Program-made: the position numbers and the translations under genes
Origin: Octopus sinensis
Lineage: Eukaryota
Direction of reading: 5' to 3'
Length of the DNA: 64,000 bases
Assembly (NCBI RefSeq): GCF_006345805.1
Contig: NC_042999.1
Span: 56,110,001-56,174,000, forward strand
Shown: positions 3,401 through 62,781 of the stretch, one piece after another
Layout of the letters: every line of letters starts with the position of its first letter
Position numbering within the stretch: the stretch's first letter is position 1
Notes under the pieces: generated by a model
What the model saw: only the letters and a program-made list of their open reading frames with translations
Database searches by the model: none
Told to the model about the DNA's origin: nothing

Positions 3401-3848
3401 GTCTCTCAGGAACGGGATCTTTGTCCTGTTACTGAGTGTTTGCAGTCCTCTGATGTTCAGTAGGAGTATCGAGGGTGAGGTGTACGTTGTTGCCGGCGGT
3501 TGTCAATCCTGTGTCTGTTTGCTGTGGTGGTCTGGTATATAGTGGGTAGTCCCACCTGCGGGCTTGGGTTTGATGAAGCCAGGTCAGCTGCTGTACAATC
3601 TTTTGTGCCATGCACAAAAAGATTATTGCTCAGCAGCTGCTCTCGACATCATGTTGGCTGTTTGTGGCGCGCACAAAGATGCGTACCTCCGTTTGGGGGC
3701 AGGTGGTGCGTGGTCCATCCCTTTTCTTTGGTTGATGGTTTGTCCATCTGCCTCGTGTCTCTGGGGCAGGGTCCCCGATGTGCAAAGCGGCAGCCTGCAC
3801 CTTCCTTTCCATGCCAGCAGAACCGCTCAAGGAGAACAGTATCTATAG
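431..3848 (-). mobile_element. Degraded CR1/L2-group non-LTR retrotransposon with intact 3' end (ORF1 CCCH remnant, APE, RT)
   Basis: RT motifs GVPQGTVLGPLLF, YADDTK, DFAKAFDKVDH and SLERRRERY (527..1746). APE motifs in 2949..3392, including LLMGDFNLP. CWHG..GAGCRFAH near 3760-3830. 3' stem-loop CAGCT-cata-AGCTG at 466-479 and an (AATC)n tail at 431-457. Confidence 0.93.
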
Positions 3849-3948
3849 NNNNNNNNNNNNNNNNNNNNNNNNNNNNNNNNNNNNNNNNNNNNNNNNNNNN
3901 NNNNNNNNNNNNNNNNNNNNNNNNNNNNNNNNNNNNNNNNNNNNNNNN
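3849..3948. other. Assembly gap (100 N)
   Basis: Run of N; true size unknown. Confidence 0.99.
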
Positions 3949-6289: not shown

Positions 6290-7383
6290 TACTCTACAGT
6301 AGATATGTAGATGACATTAATATCATACTTAGGACCAACTCTAGTGATGGTAATGTAGAAACTGAGAAGAACGTAATGGAGAGCACCCAGCAAATAGCTA
6401 ACTCCATCCACCAAAGTATCGAGATAACTATAGATTACCCCACTAAGCAACCCAACAATAAACTCCCTGTACTTGATACTGAACTTTGGTTAGAGACTGT
6501 GAACTATAGAGTGCAGCGACTCCACTTCAATTACATGAAACCCATAACTTCAAAATATGTTGTTCACAAGAACTGAGCTTTGTCACACAATATGAAAATT
6601 AACATACTGATAGCAGACTTAGAATAATGAACAATGTGTCCCCATTATGCGAACCCTATGAAACAAAAAAACATATACAGAACTGCATGCAGTTCTCTAG
6701 ATATGATCAGAAAGACAGGGTTCGAGTATACGGGGGGGGGGGGGGGGGGGCTAGAAAGAAATTAAACATTATACGTAATGATACCAGTGGTACCTGCCCT
6801 AGATATAGAAACAAAGAATGGAATAGGATACAAAGAACTTGTGACAAAGCAAACAGGGCGAACACGTGGTATAAAACCGACAAATATCAAGGAGTGATGT
6901 TTGTAGAGGCCACAGCCCATGATGAACTAGCCCATAGATTTAGAAAAGATCTGAAGGAGACCAAACTTGATTGCTGGAAACCCAGGGAACTCGGTCAGAT
7001 CACAACTAAATAGGACGTACCCCTTTCAGAATACCGAATGCACCGATGATAACTGCATGGTATGTAGGATTAGCCCTGGCATTAACTGTAGAACTCAAAA
7101 TGTAGTTTACAGCATAAGATGCACAGAAGGTGCTTGTAAAGACATGAACATGACATACATAGGGGAGACATCTAGGAGCATTGCGGAACAACTAAATGAA
7201 CATCTGAGACAATATGACAACAAAAAACAGTCCTCCATACTCTACCACATGCCAAAGACCAACTTGGGTCAACTTGATATCCGCATCTTATCCAAGCACC
7301 CAAAAGACCCAACACTCAGACAAATACGGGAGTACATCCTTATAAACGAAACTTCCCCAATACTAAATAGGAAATATACATAG
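6290..7383 (+). mobile_element. Degraded Penelope-like element (RT C-terminus and GIY-YIG endonuclease)
   Basis: RYVDDI at about 6300; LPVLD; YMKP; CRTQNVVYSIRC...YIGETSRSIAEQLNEH (ORF 6967..7383). Confidence 0.88.
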
Positions 7384-22384: not shown

Positions 22385-24000
22385 TATCACTTTGATCACT
22401 TTGACCGACCAGTCCATCAGGCATCCATTTGACACCGCTGGTCACAGCACGCTGTTCACTCCTCTCTGGATCACGCCTTTCTCATCCACGTAATCCCAAT
22501 CATCCTCTTGAAATCGTCACTCCACCGTCGTGGAGGTCTTCCGGGTAGTCTTTTCTGCTTACGCAGGTACCACTCAACAACTGCGTGCGTCCACCGATTA
22601 TCGGTGAGCCAGGCGACGTGTCCAGCCCATCTATACTTGCTGCAAGTATACTCTGCGATGACATCTCTCACGCCGGACTTCTTTCTGATGATGTTGCTAT
22701 TTATGTGCTCTCTCAACGAGATACCAAGCATTGACCTTTCCATGGCTCTTTGAGCCGTTATCAGTCTTTGCTCTTCTCTTTTGTGGTAGCCCATGATTCA
22801 CTACCATATAACATTGCAGGCAGATCTGCACTGTTAATGAGGTTGGCGCGGGTGGTCCTGTCCAACCTTCCCTTGAGCACATCCCTTATGCCATTGAACG
22901 CCTTCCATCCGGCCCTTACTCTCTTTTGAGATCTCCTTTTTGATATCCCAGCACATATTTACTTCCTGTCCCAGGTAGACATATTCTCTCACCTCCTCTA
23001 TTTCATCACTGCCGATCACCATTCGACCTGTTGGTACGTTGTCTGACCGCATGAACTTTGTTTTCATGCGGTTCATCTTGAGACCTACTGCAGAACTTTT
23101 GATGTCGAGCTCCGTCAGCATGGTCTGAAGCTGATCCATGTTTTCAGCGATGAGTACGATGTTGTCAGCGAAACAGAGGTGAGTGAGGAGCTCGCCATTG
23201 ATGTTCGAGACATGCAGTGAAAAGTTTTGGGGAGATTGTATCTCTTTGCTTCACTCCCTTCTCGACCGGCACTCGTATGGGTGATGACAGTAGAGCTATG
23301 TCGGTGGTGCATCCGGAATTTGCCTCTCTGAGCAGCTGCACATATTGCCCTTCGATTCCTTGCCTCTGCAGCGAGTTCAGCACTGCGTTGGTTTCGACAC
23401 TATCGAAGGCCTTCTCATAATCTATAAACGCAACGCAAAGAGGCAGCTTGTACTCATTTGCTTGCTCAAGCAGTTGCATTAGAGCAAATATATGGTCCAT
23501 TGTGCTGTAGTTCTTCCGGAAGCCTGCTTGCTCCCTCGGTTGTTGTTCGTCGAGACAACGTGACAACCTGTTCAGAATGATCTTCGTGAACAGCTTGTAC
23601 ACGTGAGACAGCAGGCATATGGGTCGGTAGTTCTTTAGATCTTCTCTGTCGCCCTTCTTATACAGCAGGATGGTATTTGACTCTTTCCACTGCGAGGGAA
23701 TTCTTCCCTCGTCTAGATAGTGCGTAAATCGCTCAGCGAGGATTTTCCAGAGCTGCTCTCAAAGTCATTCTTTAGTTGCTGACGAATCACTCTGCTGAGA
23801 AGGGAATATTCAAAGTGATCTTCAATAGTCCTCATCATATTTTTCCTCTTCTCGAGCAACTTCATAGTTTCTTCCGAGATTCTTCCCTTCTTTTCTCTTG
23901 GGCATACACCCTTAGCCTTCCTCAAACACTCCTTCAATTTCCCTATCAGTGAGTTGTAGTCATCGTCTATGTCATCTCCTTGGCACCAGTCTTCCTGCAT
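22385..24000 (-). mobile_element. RTE-clade LINE, second family (5'-truncated, internal deletion in RT)
   Basis: EQQPREQAGFRKNYSTMDHI, FIDYEKAFDSV, GVKQRDTISPKLF, FADN and KYRWAGHVA...GRPPRRWSDD motifs; (CAAAGTGAT)n tail at about 22387-22404. Confidence 0.9.
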
Positions 24001-26942: not shown

Positions 26943-29665
26943 ATGTCCAGAACCTGGAGGAGCATGGAATTGGCATTGTTTTTGAGAGCCTGGTACTATG
27001 CTGATGGAGATAATCCAAACAACATAATTACAGCTGCGCTGAAGAGCAATGGTTACACAAAGACGTTAGCACAGATAGAGCGAAAGAAGCAGGAGTTTAT
27101 ATGCTCCTATGCACTCATAAGATCCCATATCAAGACTCTTGATGCCATCTTTGACAACGAACAAAGCAAAGATGACAAGGATGGAGGCATGGATGCAGAT
27201 GAAAGATGTCACCCCCACTTGGTAGACACCCAGGACAACAAAGAAGATTCAAGTGAGAAACCTGCTCAGGAAGTAAACCCAAGTGCAAGTGCCCCTACCA
27301 GCATCAAATGGCAAAACTACGGAGATGAAAGAGCCCAAAAAGAAGGAAAAACTAAAAGAAAAACAGCCACAGAAGGAAAAACTAAAACTCAAACAAAACC
27401 AAAAGATGAAACAGCCAAAGAAAGAAGCAAACCTGACTATCCATATACCAAAAAGGATAGAAAGAGACAGCACACATGAATGTGTAAATTCTACCTGAAA
27501 GGTGTCTGCTGGCATGGAGAGGAAGGTGCAAGCTGCCGTTTTGTACACCAAAGACCCTGCCACATAAACATGAAACAGAGCGGAAACCACCTACCAAAAG
27601 GAAAAGGAAAGGACTACGCATCACCTGCCCCAAAACGGAGGTATACAGATGTAGTGCATTACAAACCATCAACATGTTATTGAAAGGGCAGCTGCTGAAC
27701 AGGAATCTTTTTTGTGTATGGCGCAAAAGATTGTACAGCAGCTAACCTGGCTCCATCAAATTCAAACTCACAGATGGGACTATCCACAATACACAAGACC
27801 ACCACATCAAATAGACCCAAGGTGGACACCACTGGCAACAACACACACATCACCTTGATGCTCCTACTGAACATCAGAGGACTGCTAACACTCAGTAACA
27901 GGACAAAAATCCCTTTCTTGAGAGACTTTGTTGCATGCAATCAAGTCTTATGCATAGCACTTACAGAAACACACCTGAAACCGGATATAGCAGATGCGGA
28001 AATACACATACCACAGTATTACGGACCGACAGAAAAGAAAGGAGTCATGGTGGAGTTGCTATGTACATCCGCGAGGACCTCACACCCCAGGTCCTATTGT
28101 CATACTCAAATTCGGTTTGTGACACACTAATTGTACATATAAGGCAACTCAGCGTAGTTATTTGTGCTACATATCGCCCTCCAGATGCTCCAAGTCATAT
28201 AGGCAAGTTTGAAGACTGCCTTACAAAAATAGAAGAAGTTCTAGTCACATCAGAACAACACATAAGTGTACTTCTTATGGGAGACTTCAATCTGCCCAAT
28301 GTCAGATGGCCCGAGGGCCTTTCTCTCCCAGGAATGACATGATGCGAACAAGGACAGGCTAAGTCCCTCCTGAACTTCATCAACACTCTGTACATGGAGC
28401 AAATAATACTCCAACCAAGGCAGGTAACATACTGGATCTCTGCTTCACAAATAATATGGGTATCATCCATAATGTGAAAGTGACACCGACACTTCTCTCG
28501 GTTCACAACATGGTAGAGTTGACCATGTACGGGCCAAAGGAAAACATGGACACGCAGCCTACAAGAAACTCTCAGAATCTTTCCAGCTTGAACTTCCATA
28601 AGGCAAACTGGAAACAAATTGAGAAAGAGATCCTCAAACAAAACTGGCCTAAATGTCTCTCCTCATCAGACATCGACATGAAACTTCAAAAATTCATGTC
28701 TGTAATGCAAACCATATGCTACAAATGTGTCCCAGAGAGAAAGGCCACTGTACACAAGAACAAAATCCCCAGAGAGAGGAAAATTCTTAGACGGCGTACA
28801 AAAGTTTCAAATCGCCTAAACAAACAAATTGAAAGCAGTGAAAAGTCCTGCCGGAAAATAAAACTGCTGGAAATTGAAAAATGTCTGCAACTTTCCCATG
28901 AAAAAGAAAGAGCAGACAAAAAAGCCTGGGCTATAGACAACATAAAATCTAACCCCAGAGCTTTCTACAAGTTTGCTAAAGAAACAGCTACGGTACACTG
29001 TAGGATAGGGCCACTCCTTGAAAAAGATGGTGCACTCACAGGAAATCCAATGAGGATAAGTGAAATACTAAATGAGCAATTCAAAAGTATTTTCACTCCA
29101 CCCCTAGGGCATTTTCAAGTTAGCAATCCAACTGACTTCTTTACCATTGCAGATATAAAATCAGAGGCAGCAATGAGTGATTACATCAATATAAAGGAAG
29201 ACGATGTAATAAGGGCTATAGATGAAATGAACCCAAATTCAGCTACTAGCCCCGATGGATTCCCAGCAATCCTTCTAAAAGTATGTAAAAGTATGTAAAA
29301 GAGTCCTAGCAAGACCACTTTCAGAGCTTCCTTGCAACTGGCAAACTTCCAAGAAAACTGAAGGAGGGTAAAATACGCCCTATTCATAAAGGAGGTAGCA
29401 GAGTGGAGACCAAGAACTACAGACCCATCTCTCTGACCTCACACATCAGTATGGTCATGGAACGAATAGTCAGAAGGAAACTAATCGCCTTCCTTGAAGA
29501 AAATAACTTGCTGCCTGACACCCAACATGGTTTCCGACCAGGAAGAAGCTGCCCAACTCAGCTCCTACAACAATATAACTGGGTGCTGAAACAACTGCTC
29601 AACCAGTCAAATGTGGAAGTGATATATCTCGACTTTGCAAAGGCCTTTGATAAAGTCGAAAATGG
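26943..29665 (+). mobile_element. CR1/L2-group LINE, 5' portion (ORF1, APE, N-terminal half of RT), 3'-truncated
   Basis: CKFYLKGVCWHG..SCRFVH (CCCH); LLNIRGL, ALTETHL and LLMGDFNLP (APE); NYRPISLTSHI, QHGFRPGRSC and DFAKAFDKV (RT). Confidence 0.92.
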
Positions 29666-29933
29666 CATTATCTTGTGGCATTACTGGAGCCTTTAGTCGA
29701 ACGAATTGACCCCAAGTATTCATTCTATCAGTCTCTTTTTGTGAAGTTGCTAATTTATGAAGATGTAAACATACCAACATTAGCTGGCAAGCACCCGTAG
29801 ATATAGACATATATATGTGTGTGTGTATAGTGATACACACACACACATGTATATCACTATAAATACATAAGTGTACATGACATTTGGTAAAAAAAAAAAG
29901 GTGATCGTGTAACATACTTCCTGGCTGTTGTTA

Positions 29934-32290
29934 TTATAACACCTCGTTGTAAACAATGTTCTTTGTTTTTCTTTGTGGAGTGTATGCAAAGAGGTTTCTT
30001 ATGCTTCCCACTCTTGAGCAGCTAACATACAGTTGTCCATGAGAGAAGCAGGGCTCTTCCAAGAGAAAAGCAGCCACAGAGAGGGTTTGACCCTGAGATT
30101 TGTTAATGGATATGGCAAAACTGACACGATGGTGGAATTGCAGTCTTCTGAACGTAAATGGAATTTCTGCTCCTGATGGAGTAAGAGGAACTCTTGGAAT
30201 GAAGACGTCATCACCTTTTCCACATCCAGAAAGAATGGTAGCCTCGTTACCCTGTGGCATCATTTTCTTTATCACCAGTCGTGTTCCATTGCAAAGCCTT
30301 GGTGGTTCCAGACTGCGGAGTAGCATTACAGGAGTTCCAACTTTAAGTGCTAATATGTGGGAAGGTAATCCAGGAGGCTCCAATGAATTGAGAAATTCAG
30401 GAGGATAGTTCACCACTTCATTTTTATCTGGAATTGTATCAACAGACTTGTGCGAAAAGTTCTGGGAAGAGAATGCATTAGCTGTTGATATATTTTTTTA
30501 ACAGTGACGTTTTTTGGAGCTAATATTGCTCTTTCACACAACCAATTGTGATTTACATAGTTTTCTGTGAAGTTGGGAAATACTTTGTTTGAGCTCATCC
30601 ACAGAATTTGACAACAGAGGAAAATGGCCACACTTCCATTTCCCCTGCAGTGTTGAGAGGCACATTGCCATCACCAAGTGTCAAAATGTTCTGTGCAAAT
30701 ATTGCAGACATTTGTTCGCCATGTAACTGAGCTCTCATGTTAATGATAAGACTGAGGATTGTGACATGACGCCACAGGGTAGAGGACTTTAGGCATGCTT
30801 GAACCTCATGTGCTCTAGTGCCTTTTGAAATGACAGAAAGAGTTTGCCTGAAAGTACCTGACAACAGAAGTGTTACACCTTGCATTGGAGCCTGACAGTC
30901 TCAGATGTCTTTCAGGACTCTATCTAATGCTTCCAAGGCTCCCTTGCGAGCCATAGTGCAATCATCCCAGACAATTAGACGACACCTTTTAAGTACCTGT
31001 TCCTGATCTGAGCTTTGGATGCTACTAAATTGAGAAGGAGTTTAAAAGTCAAGTGTGCTGTCCTGCCACCGGGTAACAAAGTAGCTGCAATCCCAGAGGA
31101 AGCAACAGCTACTGCAATGTCCTGGTGCTGCCTAACTTCTACAAGGAGAAGCTTCGTAATAAATGTTTTCCCTGTCCATCCAGGAGCATCTCTCACATTG
31201 GCACACACTGTTAAGAATAGTTCTGTAAGTCTGCAGCTGGTCTGGAAGTAATTTAGACTCCTTTTCAATAATGTACTTTCAAAGCACTTGAGTGTCATAT
31301 GATGTTTCACGAATGACAGCAGTGGGAAGGCTATTTGACTCTGACTTGAATGTTTATGGCAAGCCATATGTGGACAATTCATTTCCAACCAGTGTAGCAA
31401 TTTTGTCTTCGAAGTCAAGAGTTTTGTTGTAGACTTCATTGCTGATACCCTCCATGTCAGGATAGAGCAGTTGAGCATGCCACTTAAAGTTTTCAGCCAG
31501 GTTGTCTCTGTATTTGAGCTATAGAGTGACAAGATCACATGGTTCGCATGTCTGTAGTAACACTGCAAATAGTGCCCTGAAACTTTTAGGTGATTCTGAT
31601 TAAAGCAGCCTCTCCCAAAGTTGCATCCCATTGTGCACCATCTTCTAACAGACCTTGTTGATAGTAGGCTTGCTGTATGTTATGCAGACATGTCTATGAA
31701 TGGTTTTTAGGGCCTGGAAACCCGTTGGCCTTCTGAACTCATGCAATAGTAGACGGAGGTAGATGCACTGTGTATACTCGCCCAAGGCAAGTGTAAAAGT
31801 TAATGCCAGGGTATCCATGAACATTTTGACCTGCTTTCCTTGGGGCCCATTTTTTACCATTCCAAGTGTAGTACAATGGAATCTGTGAACACAGAAAGGT
31901 CTGAGCGAATGGATCAACTTGACAAAGCTTGAAGAATGCAGTGAGCGTGCTATCCCTTGGTTCTTCTGCCAACAGAGAAGCATTAGCATCAGTGAAGTAA
32001 CCATTTGACCATTTTCCAGGTGCACTGCAAGCTGTTGAATGGCAGGGCGTCGTTGGTGAAATGGAAAGCCAAAAATGCACCAGAAAGCCTCGTTGCTACT
32101 TATGTACCAACCCACCTGATAGTGTGTCGCCACATCCTGGCAGTATTCCTGTTGAAGTCCAAACAGTGCAGCATCAGAGCCCTTGTTCACATACTTACAA
32201 ACGTGCTTTACGAACTTTTGGTTGGTATTTGTAGCACGTTGTGCTACCACTAAAAATGGTATTTGCGAAAAGCTGTTACGTGGAAGCAAA
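29934..32290 (-). mobile_element. Degraded Helitron RepHel coding fragment
   Basis: KYVNKGSD, YISSNEAFW.IFGFP.H, LAVHLENGQ; DAPGWTGKT (Walker A), ASSGIAATLLPGGRTAH; INKSQGQTL, PCFSHGQLYVSCSRVG. Confidence 0.92.
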
Positions 32291-33887: not shown

Positions 33888-35070
33888 CATCATCATCATT
33901 ATCGTTTAACATCCGCTTTCATGCTGGCATGGGTTGGACATTTTGACTGAGGACTGGTAAGCCAGAGGTTGCTCCAGGCTCAATGTGATCTGGCAAAGTT
34001 TCTAAAGCTGGATGTCTTTCCTAACGCCAATCACTCCGAGTGTGTAGTGGGTGCTTTTACATGACACTGGTACGAGGGCCAGTCAGGTGGTTCTGGCAAT
34101 GACCAAACTCAAAAGGTGTTTTCTACGTACTACCTGTACAGGAGCCAGTCCGGCAGCACTGGCAACAACTACACTCGTATGTTGTCAGGTCTTCTGAAGT
34201 ACAGCATATCTCCAAAGGCCTCAGTAAGGCTCTATGTTCAAAGGTCGTGCTTCACCACCTCATACCAGGTTTTCCAGGGTCTACCTCTTCCACAGGTTCC
34301 CTCAACTGCTAGGATATGACACTTTATCACACAGCTGTCCTCATTCATTTGCAACACATGACCATACCAGCACAGTCATCTCTCTTGCACACCACATCTG
34401 ATGCTTCTTAAATCCAACTTTTCTCTCAGGTCACTTACACTCTGTTGTGTATGCACACTGACCTTACACATCCAGCGGAGCATACTCGCTTCATTCCTTA
34501 TAAGCTTACACATGTCCTCAGCAGTCATAGCCCACGTTTCACTGTTGTATAGCATGTCTGTTCGTACACATGCATCATACAGTCTACCTTTTACTCTGCG
34601 CAAGAGACCCTTTGTCACCAGCAGAGGTAGGAGCCCTCTGAACTTTGTCCAGGCTATTCTTATTCTAGCAGCTACACTTTCAGAGCATCCACTTCCTGCT
34701 ACTGACTTAGTCACCTAGGTAACGGAAGCTATCAACTACTTCTAGTTTTTCTCCCTGGAATGTAACAGAAACTGTTCTCTGCACATTTTCTGTGTTTATA
34801 GCACCTGAGCACTTACCACACACAAAAACTATCTTCCCAGTTAGCCTCCCTTTGATATTGCTGCACTTCTTATGTGTCCATAGCTTACACTGGGTACATC
34901 TTATGGAGTTTCTACCTACGCCTTTTCTACAGATCGAGCAGGGCCATCTACCTGAAGGGATTTGTGGTTTGTCTGCCTTCCCACTTATTAAGACTTTGGT
35001 TTTAGCTAGGTTGACTCTAAGGCCCTTCGATTCTAATCCTTGATTCCATACCTGAAACTTTTCCTCCAAC
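33888..35070 (-). mobile_element. RTE LINE of the same family, inverted relative to the 32835 copy
   Basis: ORFs 34376..34714 and 34707..35072 (ESKGLRVNLAKTKV, WPCSICRKGVG.NSIRC); tail at 33888. Confidence 0.92.
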
Positions 35071-35414
35071 AACTCATTATATTACCAACACAATATTGAA
35101 TTTCTACAAAGCAAGCCAAATTTTTTTTTCTATTGCACATAATCAGTTGTAATATTCCTTCCAGATCATTGTTTGAAACCTTTCCTATCAGATTTCAAAC
35201 TTAATTCAATGATTCAATCAATACACATTAGATAACTATTTTGTGACTGTGCAGTTGTTGCTGCTGATGGATATGGTGGTAGTGGCAGTAGTTGTACAAC
35301 AGCAGCGCTGATGATGATAATGTTATTCCTGTTAAGCTACAAAAAGCAAAAAGTAAGTAACACAATTTCTTTAGCAGCTCCAAAATGTGAATGTATTAAA
35401 TAAATTTCAAATAC

Positions 35415-38529: not shown

Positions 38530-39165
38530 ATCATTTCAGAATAAATATTGGTTTCAAATTTTGGCACAAGGCCAGCAAATTCGGGGTGGGGTGGGGAGTC
38601 CATTGCATTGACCCCAGTGCTCAACAGCTACTTTACTTTATTGACCCCAAAAGGTTGAAAGGCAAAGTGGAAGCACTCCGTCGGTTACGACGACGAGGGT
38701 TCCGGTTGATCCGAATCAACGGAACAGCCTGCTCGTGAAATTAACGTGTAAGTGGTTGAGCACTCCACAGACACGTGTACCCTTAACGTAGTTCTCGGGG
38801 ATATTCAGCGTGACACAGAGAGTGACAAGGCTGGCCCTTTGAAATACAGGTACAACAGAAACAGGAAGTAAGAGTGAGGGAAAGTTGTGGTGAAAGAGTA
38901 CAGCAGGGATCACCACCATCCCCTGCCGGAGACTCGTGGAGCTTTAGGTGTTTTCGCTCAATAAACACTCACAACGCCCGGTCTGGGAATCGAAACCGCG
39001 ATCCTATGACCGCGAGTCCGCTGCCCTAACCACTGGGCCATTGCGCCTCCACAAAAGGCAAAGTAAACCACAGCAGAATTTGCACTCAGAATGTAAAAAC
39101 AGATGAAATGCTGCTAAGCATTTTGCCCTGATTGCTAACAATTCTGTCAGCTCACTGCCTTACTT
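38530..39165 (-). mobile_element. tRNA-derived SINE with Meta-like central domain, interrupted by a nested SINE
   Basis: Minus strand GGCAGTGAGCTGACAGAATTGTTAGCA head and CTTTGCCTTTCAACCTTTTGGGGTCAATAAA core; same family as 62110-62335. Confidence 0.7.
38669..39053 (-). mobile_element. Young tRNA-derived SINE nested in the SINE above
   Basis: Head GTGGAGGCGCAATGGCCCAGTGG...GGTTTCGATTCCC; 11-bp TSD AAAGGCAAAGT at 38658-38668 and 39054-39064; CpG-rich. Confidence 0.88.
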
Positions 39166-39271
39166 CAAGATAAATATTGACAATTTAATCTCATCTACAA
39201 GGAATAAAAAAATTACAGACATGCACATTGCTCTTCTGAATAACAAAATAAATTTATATATTTCAACTTAC

Positions 39272-41567: not shown

Positions 41568-41968
41568 CAAATATCTTGGAGTGATGATTTGATAAAATTC
41601 CACAAATTTTATTGTTTTTTCTCTTTGTTCTTTATCTTACATAAGGCAAACTCTAGTTCATTTCTTTAAAATCTAATTGAAAAATGAAAGAATTGAATAA
41701 CAAAAGTTTATTTTATCTAATTATATCTCTTCAACTTTGTATACATTCAATGAATTCCCTGCAATATCAATGACATTGTCTTGATCATTCAATCCAGACA
41801 TGTCAGATACAATAAAATTAGATATAAACTAGAAGAGAAGATGTGCAAAAGAATATTCCAAGATAAATGAATTTTACAATACTTAAAAGTGAAGATGCAT
41901 CTATAGAATTATTGATCAATAATGAATTAACAATTTCTAAATAAATTTTAAAATGTCACAGAACTTAC

Positions 41969-42133
41969 CTATCACACTGTACACACTGTATGACTACTTC
42001 TTCTTCTTTATAGGCTTTATAACAACAACAACAAGTTGTCCTGCTGGAACACGGTCCACATAAAGTGTAATTATTTTGCCACTGGGACAAAAATCCAGGT
42101 GATGTAGCACCACAGTTAACACACCATACACAC
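41969..42133 (-). CDS. KMT2C: KMT2C/D exon (WCVWCVNCGATSPG...WQNNYTLCGPC...IQCVQCDR)
   Basis: ttttatag acceptor, gtaagt donor, 165 nt, phase 2-2. Confidence 0.95.
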
Positions 42134-42284
42134 CTATAAAAGAATTTTCCATAATTAAAAACAGTTCAATCCAACAATTAAAAATTATTAAAAATGTAAG
42201 GCTTGATTTAAAAAAACATTTAATTATCTAACTTTTTTTTAAAAGTCAAAATAGCACGGAAACTATATTTTTAATTAAACATAC

Positions 42285-42466
42285 CATTTACACTTCCATG
42301 GTCCTTTAGGTACTTGATCCAATGGTGGATCAAGGCAATATATATGATAGCTAATATCACATTCATCGCATAACAGTAAGCGGCCTTCATCATGAGGTTT
42401 ACCACAGCCTTCACACACAGTACAATCCAGGCAACGCCATCCCTTCTGAAGAACAACTTTGGTAAC
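42285..42466 (-). CDS. KMT2C: KMT2C/D exon, PHD (VTKVVLQKGWRCLDCTVCEGCG...LLLCDECDISYHIYCLDPPL...WKCK)
   Basis: ttttag acceptor, gtatgt donor, 182 nt, phase 0-2. Confidence 0.96.
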
Positions 42467-51440: not shown

Positions 51441-51685
51441 ATTACAGAAATAGAGACATGAGGAAGAAGGTATGTGCAATGTATGTTGAATGGGTTCAAA
51501 CATGCACTGGTGAGAGAGGATTATTAATTTATGTAGCAGCTACATTTAAGTGTAAAGTGTCTATAGAGGAAGTGTTGAACTGGATGTAAAAATGGCATAA
51601 AGATGAAAGTACAGTTCTATATTTAAGAGATGAGGAATTATGCACATTATTTACATTTGACGGATATTTGTCCTCGTTTGTTGTT

Positions 51686-51729
51686 ACAACATTTCGGCTG
51701 ATGTGCCCTCCAGCCTTCATCAGGTGACT
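51686..51729 (-). ncRNA. Hammerhead-like motif (dimer 1, left arm)
   Basis: Minus strand CAC-CTGATGA-A-GGCTG-gagggcacat-CAGCC-GAAA-TGTTGT; degenerate stems I and III. Confidence 0.55.
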
Positions 51730-51965
51730 TGGGGAAATTTCAAACCTGGGTTCTCAATCCTAAAGTATTTTTCGATGTTGTTGTTATTATTATTATTATT
51801 CAGGTCACTGCCTGGAATCAAACTCAGAGTCTTGGGGTTAGTAGCCCACACTCTTAACCACTACGTCATATGCCCACGGGCATATGGTCTAGTGGTTAAG
51901 AGCACAGGCTACTAACTCCGAGATTCCGAGTTCAATTCCAGGCAGTGACCTGAATAATAATAATA

Positions 51966-52429
51966 AAAGATGGGCTACAGCAAATATTCTGCTCAATACC
52001 ACAGATTTGCTTGTCAGTTGTTTGACCTTAACCAGTTGAGCATGTCCCTTAGTGGCTGACGATATGTGCATCTCTGATCACGAGCAGAAGTAGTGGGGGA
52101 GCATCATAGCCATGTGTTGAGAGGGATTCTTTGGGGTTTGAATAATTCACCTCTGGAAACATGGGTGGTTCTTTCAACATCCTTAAACAACCCTTATTCA
52201 GGGACCTTTTGAGCGGGATGGGCTACTCAACCTGAAGAAAATTCTAATTGGGCCCCACCTGCAAGGTCATGCGCTGTTTATCTTGATATGAGATCACCAT
52301 GTCGCGCACATATGGTTGTGATGCATGTGTCTGGTGTACCCTTATCAGACGGGTAGTCATGATGGGTATATTGGGCTTCGTATATTTTACCCCAGTGTCA
52401 CTTTGATGGCATGCACTGCTCTCTCACTC
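51966..52429 (+). mobile_element. Roughly 460-bp insert in the (AAT)n linker of the right arm, probably a retro-element 3' end
   Basis: Absent from the other three arms; followed by (AAT)n. Confidence 0.6.
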
Positions 52430-52504
52430 AATAATAATAATAATAACAACAACAACATCGTAAAATACCTTAGGAATGAAAACCCAGGTTCGAAATTTCC
52501 CCAA

Positions 52505-52547
52505 GACACCTGATGAAGGCTGGAGGGTATATCAGCCGAAACGTATT
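52505..52547 (+). ncRNA. Hammerhead-like motif (dimer 1, right arm)
   Basis: CTGATGA at 52510-52516, GGCTG/CAGCC stem II, GAAA at 52538-52541; the 3' strand of stem I is shortened. Confidence 0.55.
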
Positions 52548-53169
52548 AACAACAAACAAGATGAGGACAAATATCCATCAAATGTAAATAATGAAGATGA
52601 AAGTAGTAAAATGTTTTGATACCAAGAAGATATATTAAATGGAGAAGACTGATTAGCCTTAACATCAATGGCTAGAGTATAAGCAGTTGGAAAAAGTTCA
52701 GAGAACTGAATGTCATTCAAATGAATGAAGAGTATTACTGAAAGGAAAGGAATATGCTGCATATGTAAGAAGGGTCATGATTTATGACATTTCTTACATA
52801 TGAATAATGAATGTAGAGTGCATAATAAGTTGGGAAAGAGGGAAGAGAATATTTCAGTAAATGATCAAAGTATTGATGAGAAAGCAGAAGACAAAATATT
52901 ACAAAAAATGGGGATAGAGTGAATGAAGACTATTATGGAGAGAAACAGGATAAGATGAATGTGTTATGTACTGAAAAGTATGATAGTAACTACAGGAGAG
53001 GAGTGAGAGAAATGAATGTGGAAAGAAGTAGCAAAAGAAAACAAAAAGACGAAGGAAATGGGGACAACAGGATTGATGAAAGAGGATGTAGAAGATAGGG
53101 AACCCACAAAACTAAAATCTGCTTGAGCAGGAAAAATTATACCTTCATCTCCCTCTTCTGATTTTTCTT

Positions 53170-55474: not shown

Positions 55475-56179
55475 CTGAAAAATCGTATTTTTCATACAAA
55501 CAAAATACACATTTTTACAATCATTTTTGCAAAGAAATTTACTGGAAAAGAAACATGCACTAATATTTCAGATAAAATATATAATTCACTCTGGTTCAAC
55601 AAATCTTCAGGTGTATACAATGAACTTTTTTTACAGTGACTAAATAGAAAACCATGCAATAAAACTTGACTGGCATGCCTGAATACAACAATTATGGCAA
55701 GAACATACTTAGGCTGTAAGACCTGAGGATTTTCTTTTTACTGTTCAGACCACCAACTATTATAATCAGCATCACTGATTTTACTTTTTCTCATGCTGCT
55801 TTAAAGTTGGCTGAAACTCAAATACTATAACCAGGTTCTTCAGATAATGTCTAACTACATAATTGTAGCTATAGTCAAGAATGTGTATGTGTGTTATGAA
55901 TAAATCAGTCAATAAAAAGATAAAACGGAACAGAGAAGTAAGTCAAGCAAGCAGTTGAAATATCACAAGAATCTGTCCAAAATTTTTGCAACATGCCAGT
56001 TCACTGTATTAGTCTAAATATAATCAACTTCACTAATTATAAGTTCATTTCTTGCCTGATACTGAAAGTACTAAATAAAGAATGAAGTGTAATATTTTAT
56101 TTCATTCAGTCTTTCAAACAATTTATGCAATAAATTAGATTTATAGATTGATAAGGAAAATATGTAAGTAAATATATAC

Positions 56180-56237
56180 CTTTAGTCGATAATTCTTCAA
56201 ACATTTCATCCTGACTTCGTATACCAATGCTGCACAG
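56180..56237 (-). CDS. KMT2C: KMT2C/D linker exon (LCSIGIRSQDEMFEELSTK)
   Basis: tttttacag acceptor, gtatat donor, 58 nt, phase 0-1; needed to keep the frame. Confidence 0.75.
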
Positions 56238-56330
56238 CTGTAAAAAGCAAATTAATATTATTTTTTGGGAATTAGTAATAATAATTAGAGTGATTAAAAG
56301 TCAAACCATGATCAAGCAAATGAAAAGTAC

Positions 56331-56445
56331 CTCAGAATCTCGATTTCGACATACTGTGCATACATAGTCTGTCTGGCATTCATTGTCTTTAAAATGTAGT
56401 GAAAATGTACTATCTACAGTTTCAACACATTCTACATGAACATAC
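56331..56445 (-). CDS. KMT2C: KMT2C/D exon, end of PHD (YVHVECVE...DYVCTVCRNRDSE)
   Basis: ctttttag acceptor, gtactt donor, 115 nt, phase 2-0. Confidence 0.9.
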
Positions 56446-56741
56446 CTAAAAAGAAAAAAAATGACATATTAAAACAACTTGTAAACAATTATAATGTAAA
56501 AATACACAAGTAATAACAAATAAATTAAAATGTTAATCAAATATCCAAAAAATTCATTCATAATATAAAATTAGCTTAAACAAAGTGAACTGAATTTTTG
56601 AATGTTAACACACAAATCTAATTTAAAATGCTAACACTGACCATTGAAAAAGGTAATTTGTTCAGTTCTATATTTAAGAGATGAGGAATAATGTACATTA
56701 TTTACATTTGACAGATATTTGTCCTTATCTTGTTTGTTGTT

Positions 56742-56787
56742 AACAGAGCGTTTCAACTGATATACCCTCCAGCCTTCATCAGGTGTC
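56742..56787 (-). ncRNA. Hammerhead-like motif (dimer 2, left arm)
   Basis: Minus strand GACAC-CTGATGA-A-GGCTG-gagggtatat-CAGTT-GAAA-CG-CT-CTGTT. Confidence 0.55.
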
Positions 56788-57032
56788 TTGGGAAAATTTC
56801 GAACCCGGGTTCTCATTCCTAAGGTATTTTTCGATATTCGTCTTCTTATTATTATTATTCAGGTCACTGCCTGGAATCAAACTCGGAATCTTGGGGTTAG
56901 TAGCATATGGCATAGTGGTTAAGAGCGCAGGCTATTAACCCCAAGATTCCAAGTCCGATTCCAGGCAGTGACCTTAACAACAACATCAAAAAATACCGTA
57001 GGAATGAAAACCCAGATTCGAAATTTCCCCAA

Positions 57033-57075
57033 GACACCTGATGAAGGCTGGAGGTATATCAGCCAAAACGTGTTA
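57033..57075 (+). ncRNA. Hammerhead-like motif (dimer 2, right arm), G12 mutated to A
   Basis: GACAC-CTGATGA-A-GGCTG-gaggtatat-CAGCC-AAAA-CGTGTT. Confidence 0.45.
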
Positions 57076-57182
57076 ACAACAAACAAGATGAGGACAAATA
57101 CCCATCAAATGTAAATAATGTAAATAAAGGTAATTTGTTCACTAAAATTCTGGAAATTCAAATATTACAAAATTTTACTCAC

Positions 57183-57373
57183 TTCTGACATATTTTACAC
57201 TGCAGCATTGTCTTTTGAGTAAAATGCCTATAAGCTTTTCCACAGAGAGGACAAGATAATCCTTTATTACGCTGTTGATAACAACTGTCACAAACGGAAT
57301 AATTTAGGTGCCATCGAGAACTTGGTCCACTACCAGGTGTTCGTGAACCACAATCTCCACAAACTCGACAATG
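57183..57373 (-). CDS. KMT2C: KMT2C/D exon (HCRVCGDCGSRTPG...CDSCYQQRNKGLSCPLCGKAY...CKICQ)
   Basis: ttttcag acceptor, gtgagt donor, 191 nt, phase 0-2. Confidence 0.94.
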
Positions 57374-58501: not shown

Positions 58502-58616
58502 TTTGCATTTCCATCCATTCTTTGGTGCTGCTGTCATCACAGGTTTTAAGCAAAATGTATGGTATCCTTTATCACAATTATCACAAAACAGCATTTTACT
58601 TTCCTCACCAGATTGT
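58502..58616 (-). CDS. KMT2C: KMT2C/D exon, PHD (QSGEESKMLFCDNCDKGYHTFCLKPVMTAAPKNGWKCK)
   Basis: tttctag acceptor, gtatgt donor, 115 nt, phase 2-0; lies within ORF 58454..58672. Confidence 0.95.
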
Positions 58617-60956
58617 CTAGAAAAATACAATGAAAAAAAAAAAAAACAAACATTTAATATAACTTCAAGCAATAGTCTGCACTCATTTTTAAAGCAATAT
58701 AAATTTGTTGAGTATTCCCTATAAAAACATTACTTTTCAATTAATACAAAGGACGTCAACAACGTAGTACTTTGTATGAACAGCTATGGTGAAATTTCCA
58801 ATTAATTTTTTTTTTTAATTCTTTACAGTTTTAATTGCAAAGAAATGGAAAATAAATTAAATTTTCTCTGTCAGCCATTCATTTACATATCATGGCACTA
58901 GAAAGAGGGAGGAATAAATGTTAAAATCATGAAAATAATAAAGAAACATCAAGAGTTGAAAAGTGGTGAGATATAGAGAAACATTCTAAATTATCTTGTC
59001 ACTAGACCGACTAGAAATAGACGTACTAACGTTTGAGTGATACCATACTGTTTTTTTCTCCTCCAGTCTTGCATTTAATCTCTCTCTCTCTCTCATTCAT
59101 ACTCATTTCTCCTTGTCTCCTGTTTGCAACTCCTCCTCAATACATATTGAAGAGAGATACTTTTTCTTTTTCATTCCATTTTGCTCTATTCTCTCTCAGT
59201 CTTTTAAAGTCATCTCTCTTAGTTTTCCTGTTTGTGAGTTTCTGTTACAGAATCTCTCTCTGTTTCTCTCTTTGTCCTCTTTGCCAGTCCTTTACTTTAG
59301 TCTCCTCTCTGTCTCCCCCCATACAGTTATGTCAGTCACTCAAAATTAAAGCCAAAACTATCCAGAAATAACTGAGGAAGTCCCAACTTTCCATTTCTGG
59401 TCAGACTTTAGTAAGAGAGTTAAGCGAGAATATTGTTGTTGATTGAGTTGAATGAGTGATCAGCAGTTTAGTGAGAGAGCAAATTAATCCAGAATGCATA
59501 TATAAACAGATGACTGAGTCTTAGTAATTTAAACAACTCTTAACATTTTATTACAAATGTGTTCAAAGCAGCAAATTGAATAGACTCTTAAAATAGTGAA
59601 ACAAAAAGGAGTTTGCAGTTTTCCACCTTTGAAGGTACACAGGAAGATGCCTGCAAAAAATATATGTAAAGACTTACTGACATTTTTGTGTAGTATCACA
59701 AAAGGATTAGCTGAATACATAAGGCTAAACATGATGGCTGTACTTAAGTGGAGTTGCCATGCTAGTGATTGAATGTAGAAGAGATGTGCGTTGCCATCAC
59801 ATTGGTTGAAAAATCAACACAGACAGCACAGCAAGGACTTGTTAACAGATCAAATTCGAAGCACCAACTCCCATGAGGCAGTTAAATTTTAGGCATGCAG
59901 AAACAGGCAAATCAGAACAAGGCTAACACAAATAATGCGCCCACAACTATGTGAGGGCTGCATTGCTCAATATGGTGTCCAACTACGCCAAAGGGAAAAT
60001 AATCCCAACATGTGGCTACATAGTGCTCCTAGAAGACTAACTTTTAAGAAAATAAACAGTAATTGTCACTTTTGTCTGGTAATAATATCAATCCCTCTCC
60101 TCAAAGAAGCTATCAGGAGTATATACAAAACATATGTACCTATTAAATTCATAGAAAAATATTCAACAAAATCAAAATTTATATGTTTCTTCAACAGATA
60201 CCATTTAAAACTATAACAAGTGACATAATTGTGTCTTTGGAACTTTATCACTCACACTTGATGACAATACCTGTACTTTTCGTGAAGAAGCCACACTGCA
60301 CATACGCAACAGGTGGAGTATTTTCATTATTTTATTCCTAGCACCACAATACGGGAACATTAAAAGAGTATCCCAACTAACTGGATCCCATTAATGAAAT
60401 GTAAATTCAGGTCCATCACAAAAACAATAATGAAATTATTGTTCTTCTATCCACCATAAGTACATCTCATAACTACATCACACATTTCTACCAGCATGTT
60501 AGCACATACACAACAGAAAGGCAAAAAAGAAAAAAAAGGAAGCCATATGTTAATCTGATTTTTTAACAAAATTCACTCATGTGTCTAACAGCAAAACTTT
60601 GAAGGGTTGAATTTCACAAAGGAAATGTAGAGACAGGATAGAACTTAAATGTAAATATTACTAAATGCATCTGTATATGTAGCAGTACTGTACCCAATGC
60701 AGAAACAAGAGTAAATACTCTATTGTGATCCTCACTTGAGCTTTGTTGAGTATCACAAATTGATGGAAGCAATTTTCAGGATGCAGTCCTAGCTAAATAC
60801 AGCATGTGCTTTTGCTAGAAGGAATCCTCAATGACAGCAAGGTTTAACACTGAACAACTGATTGCTCTAGTTTGAATGCAGCTCATATTTAATGGAGTGC
60901 AGTGGGGTTTTATTAATAGGGGGCATTATTAGAAGTCACAGCAAGTATAATGATTA

Positions 60957-61084
60957 ATGTAGAGGCTTTCTTGTTGGCTCATGCTCGTAGTGTGTAGATT
61001 GTTGTTGTGGCAGTTCTCATAGAATTAAGAGCATATGTATTGTAATTTCTGTGTAGTGATTGAATCTTGAATTGAAAAATAAAG
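60957..61084 (+). repeat. Left arm of a 128-bp near-perfect inverted repeat
   Basis: Reverse complement of 62654-62781 with 1 mismatch. Confidence 0.95.
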
Positions 61085-61435
61085 GAGGGAATGGAAGACA
61101 ATAAGCCCAAAAGCATGACAGAGTTTACTGAAAGTGGAATGGAAAGAAACTTTGTCAACACATCACAATGGTGCAATCTGATAGGAAGCTACTGATTCAA
61201 GAAATAAGAGATGAAGGGAGACATAAATGTGAAATTTCAATAAAAGATTCACAAACCAGATACAGTTGAAAACTTTGCTCATGTCTAGAGCAACAACACT
61301 GTTTTTACCAAATAGGTGACATAATTAATGTATGGCAAATTGGGACTCAACATTTTCTCTTAACCAATGAAACACTCAATTTTTCATTCCACATATATTA
61401 AAGAAATAGAAAAGATTTGAAAAGTATTAACTTAC

Positions 61436-61613
61436 TTGCAAGTAAGACATATTTTACATCTTGGACACTGCCACCCTGCTCGCACAGCAGGTTGAACTGC
61501 TACTGCTGGTTGTAAACAGTGGCCATGATAATGACCACCACAAGTAGTGCAAAATAGCAAAGAACAATTGCCAGACCATTTGCTACATGCAATACAGAGA
61601 GCCTGTTGACCAG
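61436..61613 (-). CDS. KMT2C: KMT2C/D exon, PHD (ALCIACSKW...FCTTCGGHYHGHCLQP...RAGWQCPRCKICLTC)
   Basis: tttacag acceptor, gtaagt donor, 178 nt, phase 1-2. Confidence 0.95.
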
Positions 61614-61749
61614 CTGTAAATGAAATATATGTATAATATCTGAATAATTTGTCGAGCTAATAGAAATAAAATTAAAATTTACGAACTCAGTATCAAACAT
61701 TTAGTTGTGAATAAACAAGAAAACTGAAAAAATCTTATGAAATTCTTAC

Positions 61750-61807
61750 CAATGGTCTCTGCTTGGTCAGTGTGTTCTGGGCAGAGCAAAGACGGCCCTT
61801 TGATATC
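61750..61807 (-). CDS. KMT2C: KMT2C/D exon, end of ePHD (DIKGPSLLCPEHTDQAETI)
   Basis: ttttag acceptor, gtaaga donor, 58 nt, phase 0-1; CPEH motif. Confidence 0.9.
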
Positions 61808-62109
61808 CTAAAATTTTGAAAGTACATACAATAACACTTTTATGAGAATTTGACCATACAAAATATCTACATGATCAGATATTTAAGTTCAATAATTAAT
61901 TAAATCAAACATTACAAAATGAACATTTAATCACAAATGCCACTATATTCAAAATACCTTCACTTAATATTATGTTACCAGTTGAAAACTAAAATATAAC
62001 CTTAAATAACAAGAAAAACATTTCATATTAGATTAGCCTATTTTAAAAAAGGAATTCAAAATTAATCTTAAGTATGCAAAACATTTAATTGAATTTAACA
62101 ATATTTTTA

Positions 62110-62335
62110 AATATTGGTCTTAAATTTTGCACAAGGCCAGCAATTTTGGGGGTGGGAGTAAGTCAATTATATCAACCCCAGTGCTCAACTGGTACTTATT
62201 TTATCAATCCCAAAAGAGTGAAAGGTAAAAGCTGACCTTGGCAGAATTTGAAGTTAGAATATAAAGCTAGACAAAATACTGCTAAGCATTTTGCCTGGCA
62301 TGGTAATAATTATACGAGCTCACCACCTTGTCTCA
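62110..62335 (-). mobile_element. tRNA-derived SINE (same family as the 38530 outer element)
   Basis: GCACAAGGCCAGCAATTT and CCCCAGTGCTCAAC motifs; GCTAAGCATTTTGCC head segment. Confidence 0.7.
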
Positions 62336-62362
62336 AAAGATATATTCAAATAATTGACTTAC

Positions 62363-62467
62363 TTGGAAACATCCACTGCTAGCTGCACATGGATAATGAT
62401 ATTTTTTCGTACAACGAGGAATTCTGCAAGTTATTGTTGCGCCGTATCGATGACAGTAACTGCATTT
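62363..62467 (-). CDS. KMT2C: KMT2C/D exon, ePHD (KCSYCHRYGATITCRIPRCTKKYHYPCAASSGCFQ)
   Basis: tttacag acceptor, gtaagt donor, 105 nt, phase 0-0. Confidence 0.93.
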
Positions 62468-62653
62468 CTGTAAAATTTGTTTTTAAAATGAACATTTGCT
62501 GTAAATTGTCTAAATAATATTCACAAATTAGTTTCAACATCTAGTTTTCCCACTCTAACTCTTCAAAAAACTAAATAAACTCAGAAGCTGGAAATGTTGC
62601 CATTTTTAAGTCTAAATCAAGAAATCTGCCCTTCTGTTCATGTCTAACTTATT

Positions 62654-62781
62654 CTTTATTTTTCAATTCAAGATTCAATCACTACACAGAAATTACAATA
62701 CATATGCTCATAATTCTATGAGAACTGCCACAACAACAATCTACACACTACGAGCATGAGCCAACAAGAAAGCCTCTACAT
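62654..62781 (-). repeat. Right arm of the 128-bp near-perfect inverted repeat
   Basis: Reverse complement of 60957-61084 with 1 mismatch. Confidence 0.95.

What the first reader, a model, noticed from the sequence alone, without database searches (positions are those of the whole stretch)
60957..62781. 127/128-identical inverted repeat bracketing three ePHD/PHD exons
Seen: 60957-61084 and 62654-62781 are reverse complements with one mismatch. They do not resemble any repeat elsewhere in this window and enclose exons 62363-62467, 61750-61807 and 61436-61613 (341 nt in total), which remain correctly oriented. Known: reverse-complementary intronic pairs promote back-splicing or loop-out skipping, and are ADAR targets. 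Inference: a recent templated inverted duplication that could yield a 341-nt circRNA, or a frameshifting skip (phase 0 to phase 2) that lowers KMT2C/D dose.
Basis: partly seen in the sequence, partly recalled or inferred. Interest (0 to 1): 0.75.

Follow-up and report, generated by a model that had tools for sequence, protein, structure and literature searches.

The report
Young intronic inverted repeat in octopod KMT2C/D
Two near-identical 128-base copies in opposite orientation sit in the introns either side of three PHD-finger exons of an octopus-like KMT2C/D gene; the repeat is real, is absent from the one related species I could fetch, and could loop those exons out of the transcript, but nothing here shows that it has any effect.

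Summary
Bases 60957-61084 and 62654-62781 are reverse complements at 127/128, with abrupt ends. They are the most similar repeat pair in the 64-kb window and have no third copy there.

The arms lie in two different introns of a minus-strand KMT2C/D (MLL3/4) orthologue from an octopod cephalopod. They bracket three AG/GT-bounded exons (341 nt) that encode the C-terminal half of an ePHD finger plus a PHD finger. A spliced transcript from another animal and the Argonauta hians orthologue both validate the exon model.

The arms carry no transposon hallmarks: no target-site duplication, terminal repeats, Rfam match or intrinsic fold. In Argonauta the same three exons have no flanking inverted repeat and no arm homologue, so the feature is not conserved across octopods.

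In silico, the arms form a 127-bp stem (-222 kcal/mol) that closes a 1.57-kb loop, 186 nt from the acceptor and 351 nt from the donor. That geometry favours back-splicing, frameshifting exon skipping and ADAR hyper-editing. Skipping would give a stop after three codons.

None of these outcomes could be tested. Genome-wide copy number, read support and which arm is the original could not be tested either. This is a plausible new instance of a well-known kind of element, and interest is modest.

The parts
62654..62781 (-). Upstream-intron arm of the inverted repeat (the 5' arm in the pre-mRNA). It ends 186 nt before the acceptor of exon 62363-62467.
   Evidence: It pairs with the other arm in the minimum-free-energy fold of the 2025-nt pre-mRNA segment.
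60957..61084 (-). Downstream-intron arm of the inverted repeat (the 3' arm in the pre-mRNA). It starts 351 nt after the donor of exon 61436-61613. The single mismatch is at 61028.
62363..62467 (-). Exon of 105 nt, phase 0: KCSYCHRYGATITCRIPRCTKKYHYPCAASSGCFQ, the C-terminal half of the ePHD finger. Its acceptor would be the back-splice acceptor.
   Evidence: AG/GT flanks. Pfam PF13771. The same exon boundary is seen in other invertebrate contigs L002-L004. 89% aa identity to Argonauta P0128.
61750..61807 (-). Exon of 58 nt: DIKGPSLLCPEHTDQAETI.
61436..61613 (-). Exon of 178 nt: AGQQALC...GWQCPRCKICLTC plus 2 nt, a PHD finger. Its donor (CAA|GTAAGT) would be the back-splice donor.
   Evidence: One search matches it to the MLL3 PHD structure 2ysm. 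One search gives 88% identity to Argonauta.
58502..58616 (-). Next downstream exon: (K)QSGEESKMLFCDNCDKGYHTFCLKPVMTAAPKNGWKCK. It shows that the bracketed exons belong to the host gene. If the three exons are skipped, its first bases read ACA ATC TGG TGA.
   Evidence: Colinear with spliced transcript L001 and with Argonauta L005 17489-17643.

Best explanation
This is a genuine 128-bp inverted duplication. It is either evolutionarily young or recently homogenised, it is absent from the one other octopod I could examine, and it lies in two introns of an octopod KMT2C/D orthologue.

Origin (inferred): most likely a single local event copied one intronic segment in reverse orientation about 1.7 kb away. 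Candidate routes are a replication template switch, or capture of a locally derived fragment during break repair. Two insertions of a mobile element are less likely.

Mechanism (predicted, not observed): in the pre-mRNA the arms form a 127-bp duplex that closes a 1.57-kb loop holding three PHD/ePHD exons. This brings the donor at 61436 next to the acceptor at 62467. Three outcomes are expected at some level:
- back-splicing to a 341-nt circRNA;
- an exon-skipped linear mRNA with a stop codon after three codons, and so probably degraded by nonsense-mediated decay;
- ADAR hyper-editing of the stem.

The feature is absent from Argonauta hians and nothing indicates selection on it, so the most probable status is a neutral or slightly deleterious by-product rather than an evolved regulator.
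For: Shown:
- The repeat is real, has sharp ends and is unique in the window.
- The arms lie in different introns of one gene whose exon chain is validated by a spliced transcript and by the Argonauta orthologue.
- No target-site duplication or terminal repeats are visible at the arm ends printed. Rfam and ARAGORN find nothing. The arms alone fold no better than shuffles, z about 0.
- Every other repeat in this transposon-rich window is at most 95% identical.
- The duplex energy is -222.5 kcal/mol. 127 arm-arm pairs appear in the minimum-free-energy fold, with mean pair probability 0.99.
- No competing complementarity of 50 nt or more exists in 57-64 kb.
- In Argonauta the same three exons have no flanking inverted repeat and no arm homologue in 27.5 kb.

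From the literature:
- 30-40 nt inverted repeats near splice sites suffice for circularisation (PMC4201285).
- Replication template switching creates reverse-complement copies of nearby sequence (PMC5453318, PMC8794818).

Inference: two independent insertions of one element within 1.8 kb of each other, with none in the other 62 kb, is improbable for any plausible copy number.
Against: - There is no microhomology at either junction, which classical template switching or theta-mediated repair would usually leave.
- Described short-range template switches and inverted templated insertions are mostly tens of bases and much closer to their source (PMC5453318; PMC11724301 reports about 5-34 bp).
- Genome-wide copy number of the arm is unknown. 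The only collections I could scan hold no genome of this species.
- Read-level support for the assembly is unavailable.
- Octopus circRNAs are reported as generally low (PMC9699675).
- Over-stable hairpins sometimes inhibit circularisation (PMC4201285).
Confidence: 0.55

Rival explanations
1. The arms are two copies of an unrecognised short interspersed repeat (a 128-bp SINE, MITE or transposon fragment) that is young and multi-copy elsewhere in the genome. They would then have landed by chance in opposite orientation in neighbouring introns.
For: Both copies share exactly the same two ends. The unit ends in an A-rich stretch (GAAAAATAAAG). The window is rich in transposons, with RT, PIF1-helicase and GIY-YIG ORFs and SINE-like repeats. 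Genome-wide copy number could not be checked.
Against: Neither copy has a target-site duplication, although at 99% identity one should still be intact. There are no terminal inverted repeats, no tRNA-like or Rfam match, and no other copy, even a diverged one, in 64 kb or in the 27.5-kb Argonauta locus. All recognisable repeat families in the window are much older, at most 95% identical.
Confidence: 0.2
2. Assembly artefact: only one arm exists in the animal, and the second was created by mis-assembly or polishing.
For: The assembly is scaffolded (a 100-N gap at 3849-3948). The arm length of 128 nt is close to common maximum k-mer sizes. No independent assembly or reads could be consulted.
Against: No gap lies within 57 kb. 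The copies differ at one base, unlike an exact graph overlap. The sequence between them is unique, correctly ordered and colinear with Argonauta. A wrongly flipped contig would leave the exons inverted, and they are not.
Confidence: 0.1
3. An evolved regulatory element. The stem would be maintained, for example by gene conversion, because circRNA output, regulated frameshifting skips, or ADAR recruitment (an 'editing inducer element' for the enclosed PHD exons) tunes KMT2C/D dose or recoding.
For: The arms pair almost perfectly, lie at favourable distances from the splice sites and have no competing pairs. Long intronic stems can induce editing at nearby sites (PMC5654063, PMC3479170). Cephalopods edit RNA heavily (PMC9699675).
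Against: The repeat is not present around the orthologous exons of Argonauta hians. There is no covariation or other sign of selection to assess. No expression data were available. Octopus circRNAs are generally low (PMC9699675).
Confidence: 0.08
4. It is the footprint of an inversion made by staggered breaks. That mechanism leaves inverted duplications at the ends of the inverted segment.
For: The architecture (arm, unique segment, reverse-complement arm) is the one that mechanism produces.
Against: The enclosed exons have the same order and orientation as the rest of the gene and as in Argonauta. An inverted state would destroy the gene.
Confidence: 0.02

Closest known systems
Reverse-complementary intronic matches that drive exon circularisation (inverted Alu pairs at ZKSCAN1 and HIPK3; DNAREP1 repeats at Drosophila laccase2)
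   Same: The arms lie in the two introns flanking the exons, within a few hundred nt of canonical splice sites. They are longer than the 30-40 nt shown to suffice (PMC4201285, PMC4617980).
   Different: The arms here show no transposon features and have no other copy in view. The pairing is near perfect (127/128), whereas Alu pairs are diverged. No back-splice junction has been observed.
Mouse Sry circular RNA, flanked by a non-transposon inverted duplication
   Same: A locus-specific inverted duplication, rather than a dispersed repeat, brackets the circularised exon (as summarised in PMC4201285).
   Different: The Sry arms are over 15 kb long and the circle is demonstrated. Here the arms are 128 nt, three exons are enclosed, and the circle is only predicted.
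Replication template-switch mutations and inverted templated insertions at breaks
   Same: Both create a reverse-complement copy of nearby sequence in one step and can produce new RNA hairpins (PMC5453318, PMC8794818, PMC11724301).
   Different: Described events are mostly tens of bases and close to the source, often with microhomology. Here the copy is 128 nt, about 1.7 kb away, with 0-nt microhomology at both junctions.
ADAR editing inducer elements (long intronic stems that raise editing at nearby sites)
   Same: It is a long, nearly perfect intronic duplex within a few hundred nt of coding exons (PMC5654063, PMC3479170).
   Different: Known inducer elements are local hairpins rather than stems closing a 1.6-kb exon-bearing loop. 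Editing at this locus is untested.

Membership tests
circRNA-promoting intronic inverted repeat | The arms lie in the two different introns that flank the candidate circular exons. | tested here: met
   The arm 62654-62781 is upstream of acceptor 62467. The arm 60957-61084 is downstream of donor 61436.
circRNA-promoting intronic inverted repeat | The arms base-pair with each other in the pre-mRNA, in preference to alternative pairings. | tested here: met
   In silico only. The duplex is -222.5 kcal/mol, against -23 and -7 for the arms alone. 127 pairs appear in the minimum-free-energy fold, with mean probability 0.99. No competing inverted repeat of 50 nt or more exists in 57-64 kb. The upstream intron extends beyond the window and was not seen in full.
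circRNA-promoting intronic inverted repeat | Canonical splice sites at the back-splice donor and acceptor. | tested here: met
   AG before 62467 and GTAAGT after 61436.
circRNA-promoting intronic inverted repeat | An observed back-splice junction, or RNase R-resistant product. | not testable with these tools
   No RNA-seq is available. The expected junction is ...TGTCTTACTTGCAA|AAATGCAGTTACTGTC...
Transposable element copies (SINE, MITE or DNA transposon) | Target-site duplications flanking each copy. | tested here: not met
   Flanks are ATGATTA / GAGGGAA for one copy and AGTGAAT / AATAAGT for the other. No duplication longer than a 3-nt chance match is present.
Transposable element copies (SINE, MITE or DNA transposon) | Structural hallmarks: terminal inverted repeats, a tRNA-, 7SL- or 5S-derived head, or a poly(A) or simple-repeat tail. 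| tested here: not met
   No terminal repeats are visible in the unit. Rfam and ARAGORN find nothing. The fold z-score is about 0. The 3' end is only short and A-rich.
Transposable element copies (SINE, MITE or DNA transposon) | Many dispersed copies in the genome. | tested here: inconclusive
   No other copy is found in 64 kb, in the Argonauta locus, or in the metagenome and viral collections. The genome of the species itself could not be searched.
Template-switch or templated inverted insertion | A reverse-complement copy of nearby sequence, with a single-copy ancestral state. | tested here: inconclusive
   The reverse-complement copy is present. The ancestral state cannot be determined because Argonauta introns are unalignable.
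Template-switch or templated inverted insertion | Microhomology at the switch points. | tested here: not met
   There are 0 nt of shared sequence at either boundary, and no flank homology.
Staggered-break inversion footprint | The segment between the duplicated arms is inverted relative to the ancestral order. | tested here: not met
   The exons are colinear and co-oriented with the rest of the gene, with transcript L001 and with Argonauta L005.
KMT2C/KMT2D (MLL3/4, Trr/Lpt) gene | A clustered PHD/ePHD finger array orthologous to MLL3/4. | tested here: met
   Pfam PF00628 and PF13771. The best PDB hits are 2ysm (MLL3) and 9atn (KMT2D). Named hits are MLL3, KMT2C or KMT2D across animals, and identity to the Argonauta protein is 88-90%. 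Further PHD exons lie at 58502-58616, 57185-57365, 42278-42466 and 41968-42140.
KMT2C/KMT2D (MLL3/4, Trr/Lpt) gene | C-terminal FYR and SET domains. | not tested
   They were not looked for. Only part of the gene lies in the window.

The most novel reading that the evidence does not exclude
A recently born inverted micro-duplication of non-transposon origin has created a new RNA switch in an octopod KMT2C/D gene. The 127-bp stem would divert a substantial share of transcripts into a 341-nt circRNA or a frameshifted skip. ADAR hyper-editing of the stem, which depends on tissue and temperature in cephalopods, would set that share, coupling RNA editing to the dose of a major enhancer methyltransferase.
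Probability: 0.06. Interest if true: 0.65.

Novelty: new member of a known kind. Interest (0 to 1): 0.3.

Why it matters
If the stem forms in vivo, this locus would be a clean natural test of how one perfect, non-repetitive intronic duplex divides a pre-mRNA between linear, circular and skipped products. The animal in question has exceptionally active ADAR, and KMT2C/D dose matters in other animals. It would also be an unusually large example of a hairpin made in one step by inverted duplication. As things stand it is a hypothesis that public octopus RNA-seq and long reads could settle quickly, not a demonstrated mechanism.

Tried and rejected
- Third copy of the arm in the window. A weak gapped alignment to 60404-60520 (score 58) looked promising. 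It is not significant under stricter scoring or after allowing for about 730 tiles. The 25-nt match at 35203-35227 is within background.
- Longer, older repeat with a gene-converted core. Rejected, because the flanks align at chance level.
- Structured RNA or miRNA-like arm. Rejected: fold z-scores of about -0.03 to +1.1 and no Rfam hit.
- Independent assemblies of the same species. Exact look-ups of 20 ORFs from the window found nothing.
- Arm 24-mer in JGI metagenomes and IMG/VR: no hits.
- First protein search with the 113-aa exon product. It returned only a frog fragment. A longer concatenated query was needed to recover the Argonauta orthologue.
- Deciding which arm is ancestral by aligning Argonauta introns. 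Only exons align, and the intron hits have E-values of about 4e-4 to 0.9.
- Metagenome relatives L001-L004. These are distant animals (62-77% aa). They helped with exon boundaries only, and they contain no comparable inverted repeats.
- Staggered-break inversion. Rejected on colinearity.

Full report
**1. Observation**

Arms 60957-61084 and 62654-62781 are 128 nt long, 127/128 complementary, and separated by 1569 nt. The single difference is at 61028. BLAST gives E of about 1e-61.

The homology ends abruptly on all four sides. Outer and inner flanks of 60, 150 and 400 nt align no better than shuffled sequence. The pair is therefore not the conserved core of a longer, older repeat.

An all-against-all comparison of the window shows this to be the most identical repeat pair present. 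It is 99.2% identical, against 94.9% for the next pair and 65-92% for the many transposon copies. No further copy of the arm exists in the window. The best candidate, 60404-60520, is not significant once scoring scheme and multiple testing are considered. The only run of N is at 3849-3948, which is 57 kb away.

**2. Genomic setting**

Joined, they give an open 341-nt reading frame with Pfam PHD and zf-HC5HC2H matches. The best solved-structure matches are the PHD fingers of MLL3 (2ysm) and KMT2D (9atn).

The next exon downstream is 58502-58616. It completes the split codon and continues KQSGEESKMLFCDNCDKGYHTFCL..., as in human MLL3. Further PHD exons lie at 57185-57365, 42278-42466 and 41968-42140.

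Three lines of comparison validate the exon model:
- A spliced metatranscriptome contig from another animal (L001) is colinear across all these joins.
- Genomic contigs from other invertebrates (L002-L004) share the first exon boundary.
- A protein of Argonauta hians (P0128) is 88-90% identical over the three exons.

A retrotransposon ORF in the window also has its best named relative in Argonauta. The window therefore comes from an octopod cephalopod. The genus was not determined. A SINE-like repeat resembles octopus SINEs, but I am judging that from memory only.

The exon for the N-terminal half of the ePHD finger is not in the window. The upstream intron is therefore longer than 1533 nt. 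The enclosed exons are an integral, correctly oriented part of the host gene and not a captured copy.

**3. What the arms are**

They show none of the marks of a mobile element:
- No target-site duplication flanks either copy, although at 99% identity one should be intact.
- No terminal inverted repeats are visible.
- Rfam and ARAGORN find no match.
- Each arm alone folds no better than shuffled sequence.

The rest of the window is rich in old transposon debris, including RT, PIF1-helicase and GIY-YIG ORFs and several SINE-like families. None of it is related to the arm.

By inference, two independent insertions of one family within 1.8 kb, with none in the other 62 kb, would be unlikely for any plausible copy number. 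A single local event that copied one intronic segment in reverse orientation fits better.

The precise route is open. Replication template switching is known to create reverse-complement copies and new hairpins (PMC5453318, PMC8794818), and inverted templated insertions occur at breaks (PMC11724301). Those events, however, are mostly tens of bases and close to the source. Here there is also no microhomology at either junction, which fits blunt capture of a fragment at least as well.

An inversion made by staggered breaks would give the same arm-segment-arm layout. It is excluded because the enclosed exons are colinear with the gene and with Argonauta.

**4. Comparison with a relative**

I fetched the orthologous Argonauta hians locus (L005, 27.5 kb). 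All exons align at 85-90% nucleotide identity in the same order. The introns do not align.

In Argonauta no inverted repeat flanks the three exons. The only inverted pairs in 8.5 kb are 25-43 nt local hairpins elsewhere. Nothing in the locus resembles the arm.

The feature is therefore not an ancient, conserved element of octopod KMT2C/D. Because the introns are saturated with change, Argonauta cannot show which arm is the original. It also cannot show whether the repeat is truly recent or is kept identical by gene conversion within the lineage of the window's species.

**5. Likely mechanism (predicted, not observed)**

In the pre-mRNA the two arms form a 127-bp duplex of -222.5 kcal/mol, interrupted by one U-U mismatch. 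All 127 pairs appear in the minimum-free-energy structure of a 2025-nt segment, with mean pair probability 0.99.

The stem closes a 1569-nt loop. It lies 186 nt upstream of the acceptor at 62467 and 351 nt downstream of the donor at 61436. No competing complementarity of note exists in 57-64 kb.

Experimental work shows that 30-40 nt of intronic inverted repeat near the splice sites is enough to circularise the intervening exons. The same work shows that not all repeats succeed and that over-stable hairpins can inhibit (PMC4201285; see also PMC4617980, PMC8516420). Three outcomes are predicted:
- A 341-nt circRNA with junction ...TGTCTTACTTGCAA|AAATGCAGTTACTGTC...
- A skipped linear mRNA in which the phase-0 upstream exon meets ACA ATC TGG TGA, a stop at the fourth codon. 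This product would probably be removed by nonsense-mediated decay.
- Promiscuous A-to-I editing of the long duplex, which has 33 and 50 adenosines in the two arms. Editing would weaken the stem.

Long intronic stems can also raise editing at nearby sites (PMC5654063, PMC3479170). In Octopus vulgaris, circRNAs were reported to be low overall, which the authors linked to ADAR (PMC9699675). This tempers expectations about yield.

**6. Verdict**

Structure and geometry fit a circRNA or skipping element. Origin, age, copy number, read support and every RNA-level consequence remain untested, and the element is not conserved in the one relative available.

It is a new instance of a well-known kind of cis-element, unusual mainly in being near perfect and not obviously transposon-derived. 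I rate interest at about 0.3. The tests that would settle it are listed under next steps: long reads, a whole-genome and congener BLAST of the arm, and junction and editing searches in public octopus RNA-seq.

Noticed in passing
window 62108-62346 and 38542-39178: A SINE-like repeat lies inside the loop, in the intron between exons 62363-62467 and 61750-61807, with a diverged copy (73-79%) 23 kb away. From memory, the motif (…ccccagtgctcaactggtacttattttatc…) resembles octopus SINEs.
   Followed up: partly
window 61022-61037 and 62701-62716: The only mismatch between the arms falls inside a small internal palindrome. One arm reads CTCATAgaatTATGAG (a perfect 6-bp stem) and the other CTCATAgaatTAAGAG. 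This may be coincidence or a quasi-palindrome correction.
   Followed up: no
window 51600-52605 and 56660-57132: Several copies of a roughly 160-330-nt repeat family (73-92% identical), in both orientations, sit in the intron downstream of exon 57185-57365. These are older, transposon-type inverted pairs in the same gene.
   Followed up: no
window 56318-56462 and 56177-56222: Two blocks are conserved with the Argonauta locus at 88-89% nucleotide identity (L005 21385-21529 and 22117-22162). They are probably further KMT2C/D exons, but have no Pfam match.
   Followed up: partly
window 1-36000: This half of the window is dense with transposon debris. It holds RT ORFs (527-1537, 23165-23602), PIF1-like helicase ORFs suggestive of a Helitron (29934-31631), a GIY-YIG ORF as in Penelope-like elements (6967-7383), a 2.2-kb inverted pair at 86% (1658-3836 against 27489-29671), and long (TA/CA)n microsatellites. 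The 100-N assembly gap at 3849-3948 abuts one transposon copy.
   Followed up: partly
window 34707-35072 (minus strand): An ORF inside a repeated element (copies at about 32.8-33.5, 43.1-43.9 and 53.2-53.9 kb) carries a PHD-finger match. It appears to be a transposon-borne PHD domain unrelated to the KMT2C/D exons.
   Followed up: no
L005 18827-19392 and 19517-20083: In Argonauta hians, the intron after the exon orthologous to 58502-58616 contains a 570-bp direct duplication at 93% identity.
   Followed up: no
L005 15044-15877 against window 61614-61749: The intron between the second and third bracketed exons is 136 nt in the window species but about 830 nt in Argonauta. Intron sizes at this locus are labile while the exon boundaries stay fixed.
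   Followed up: no
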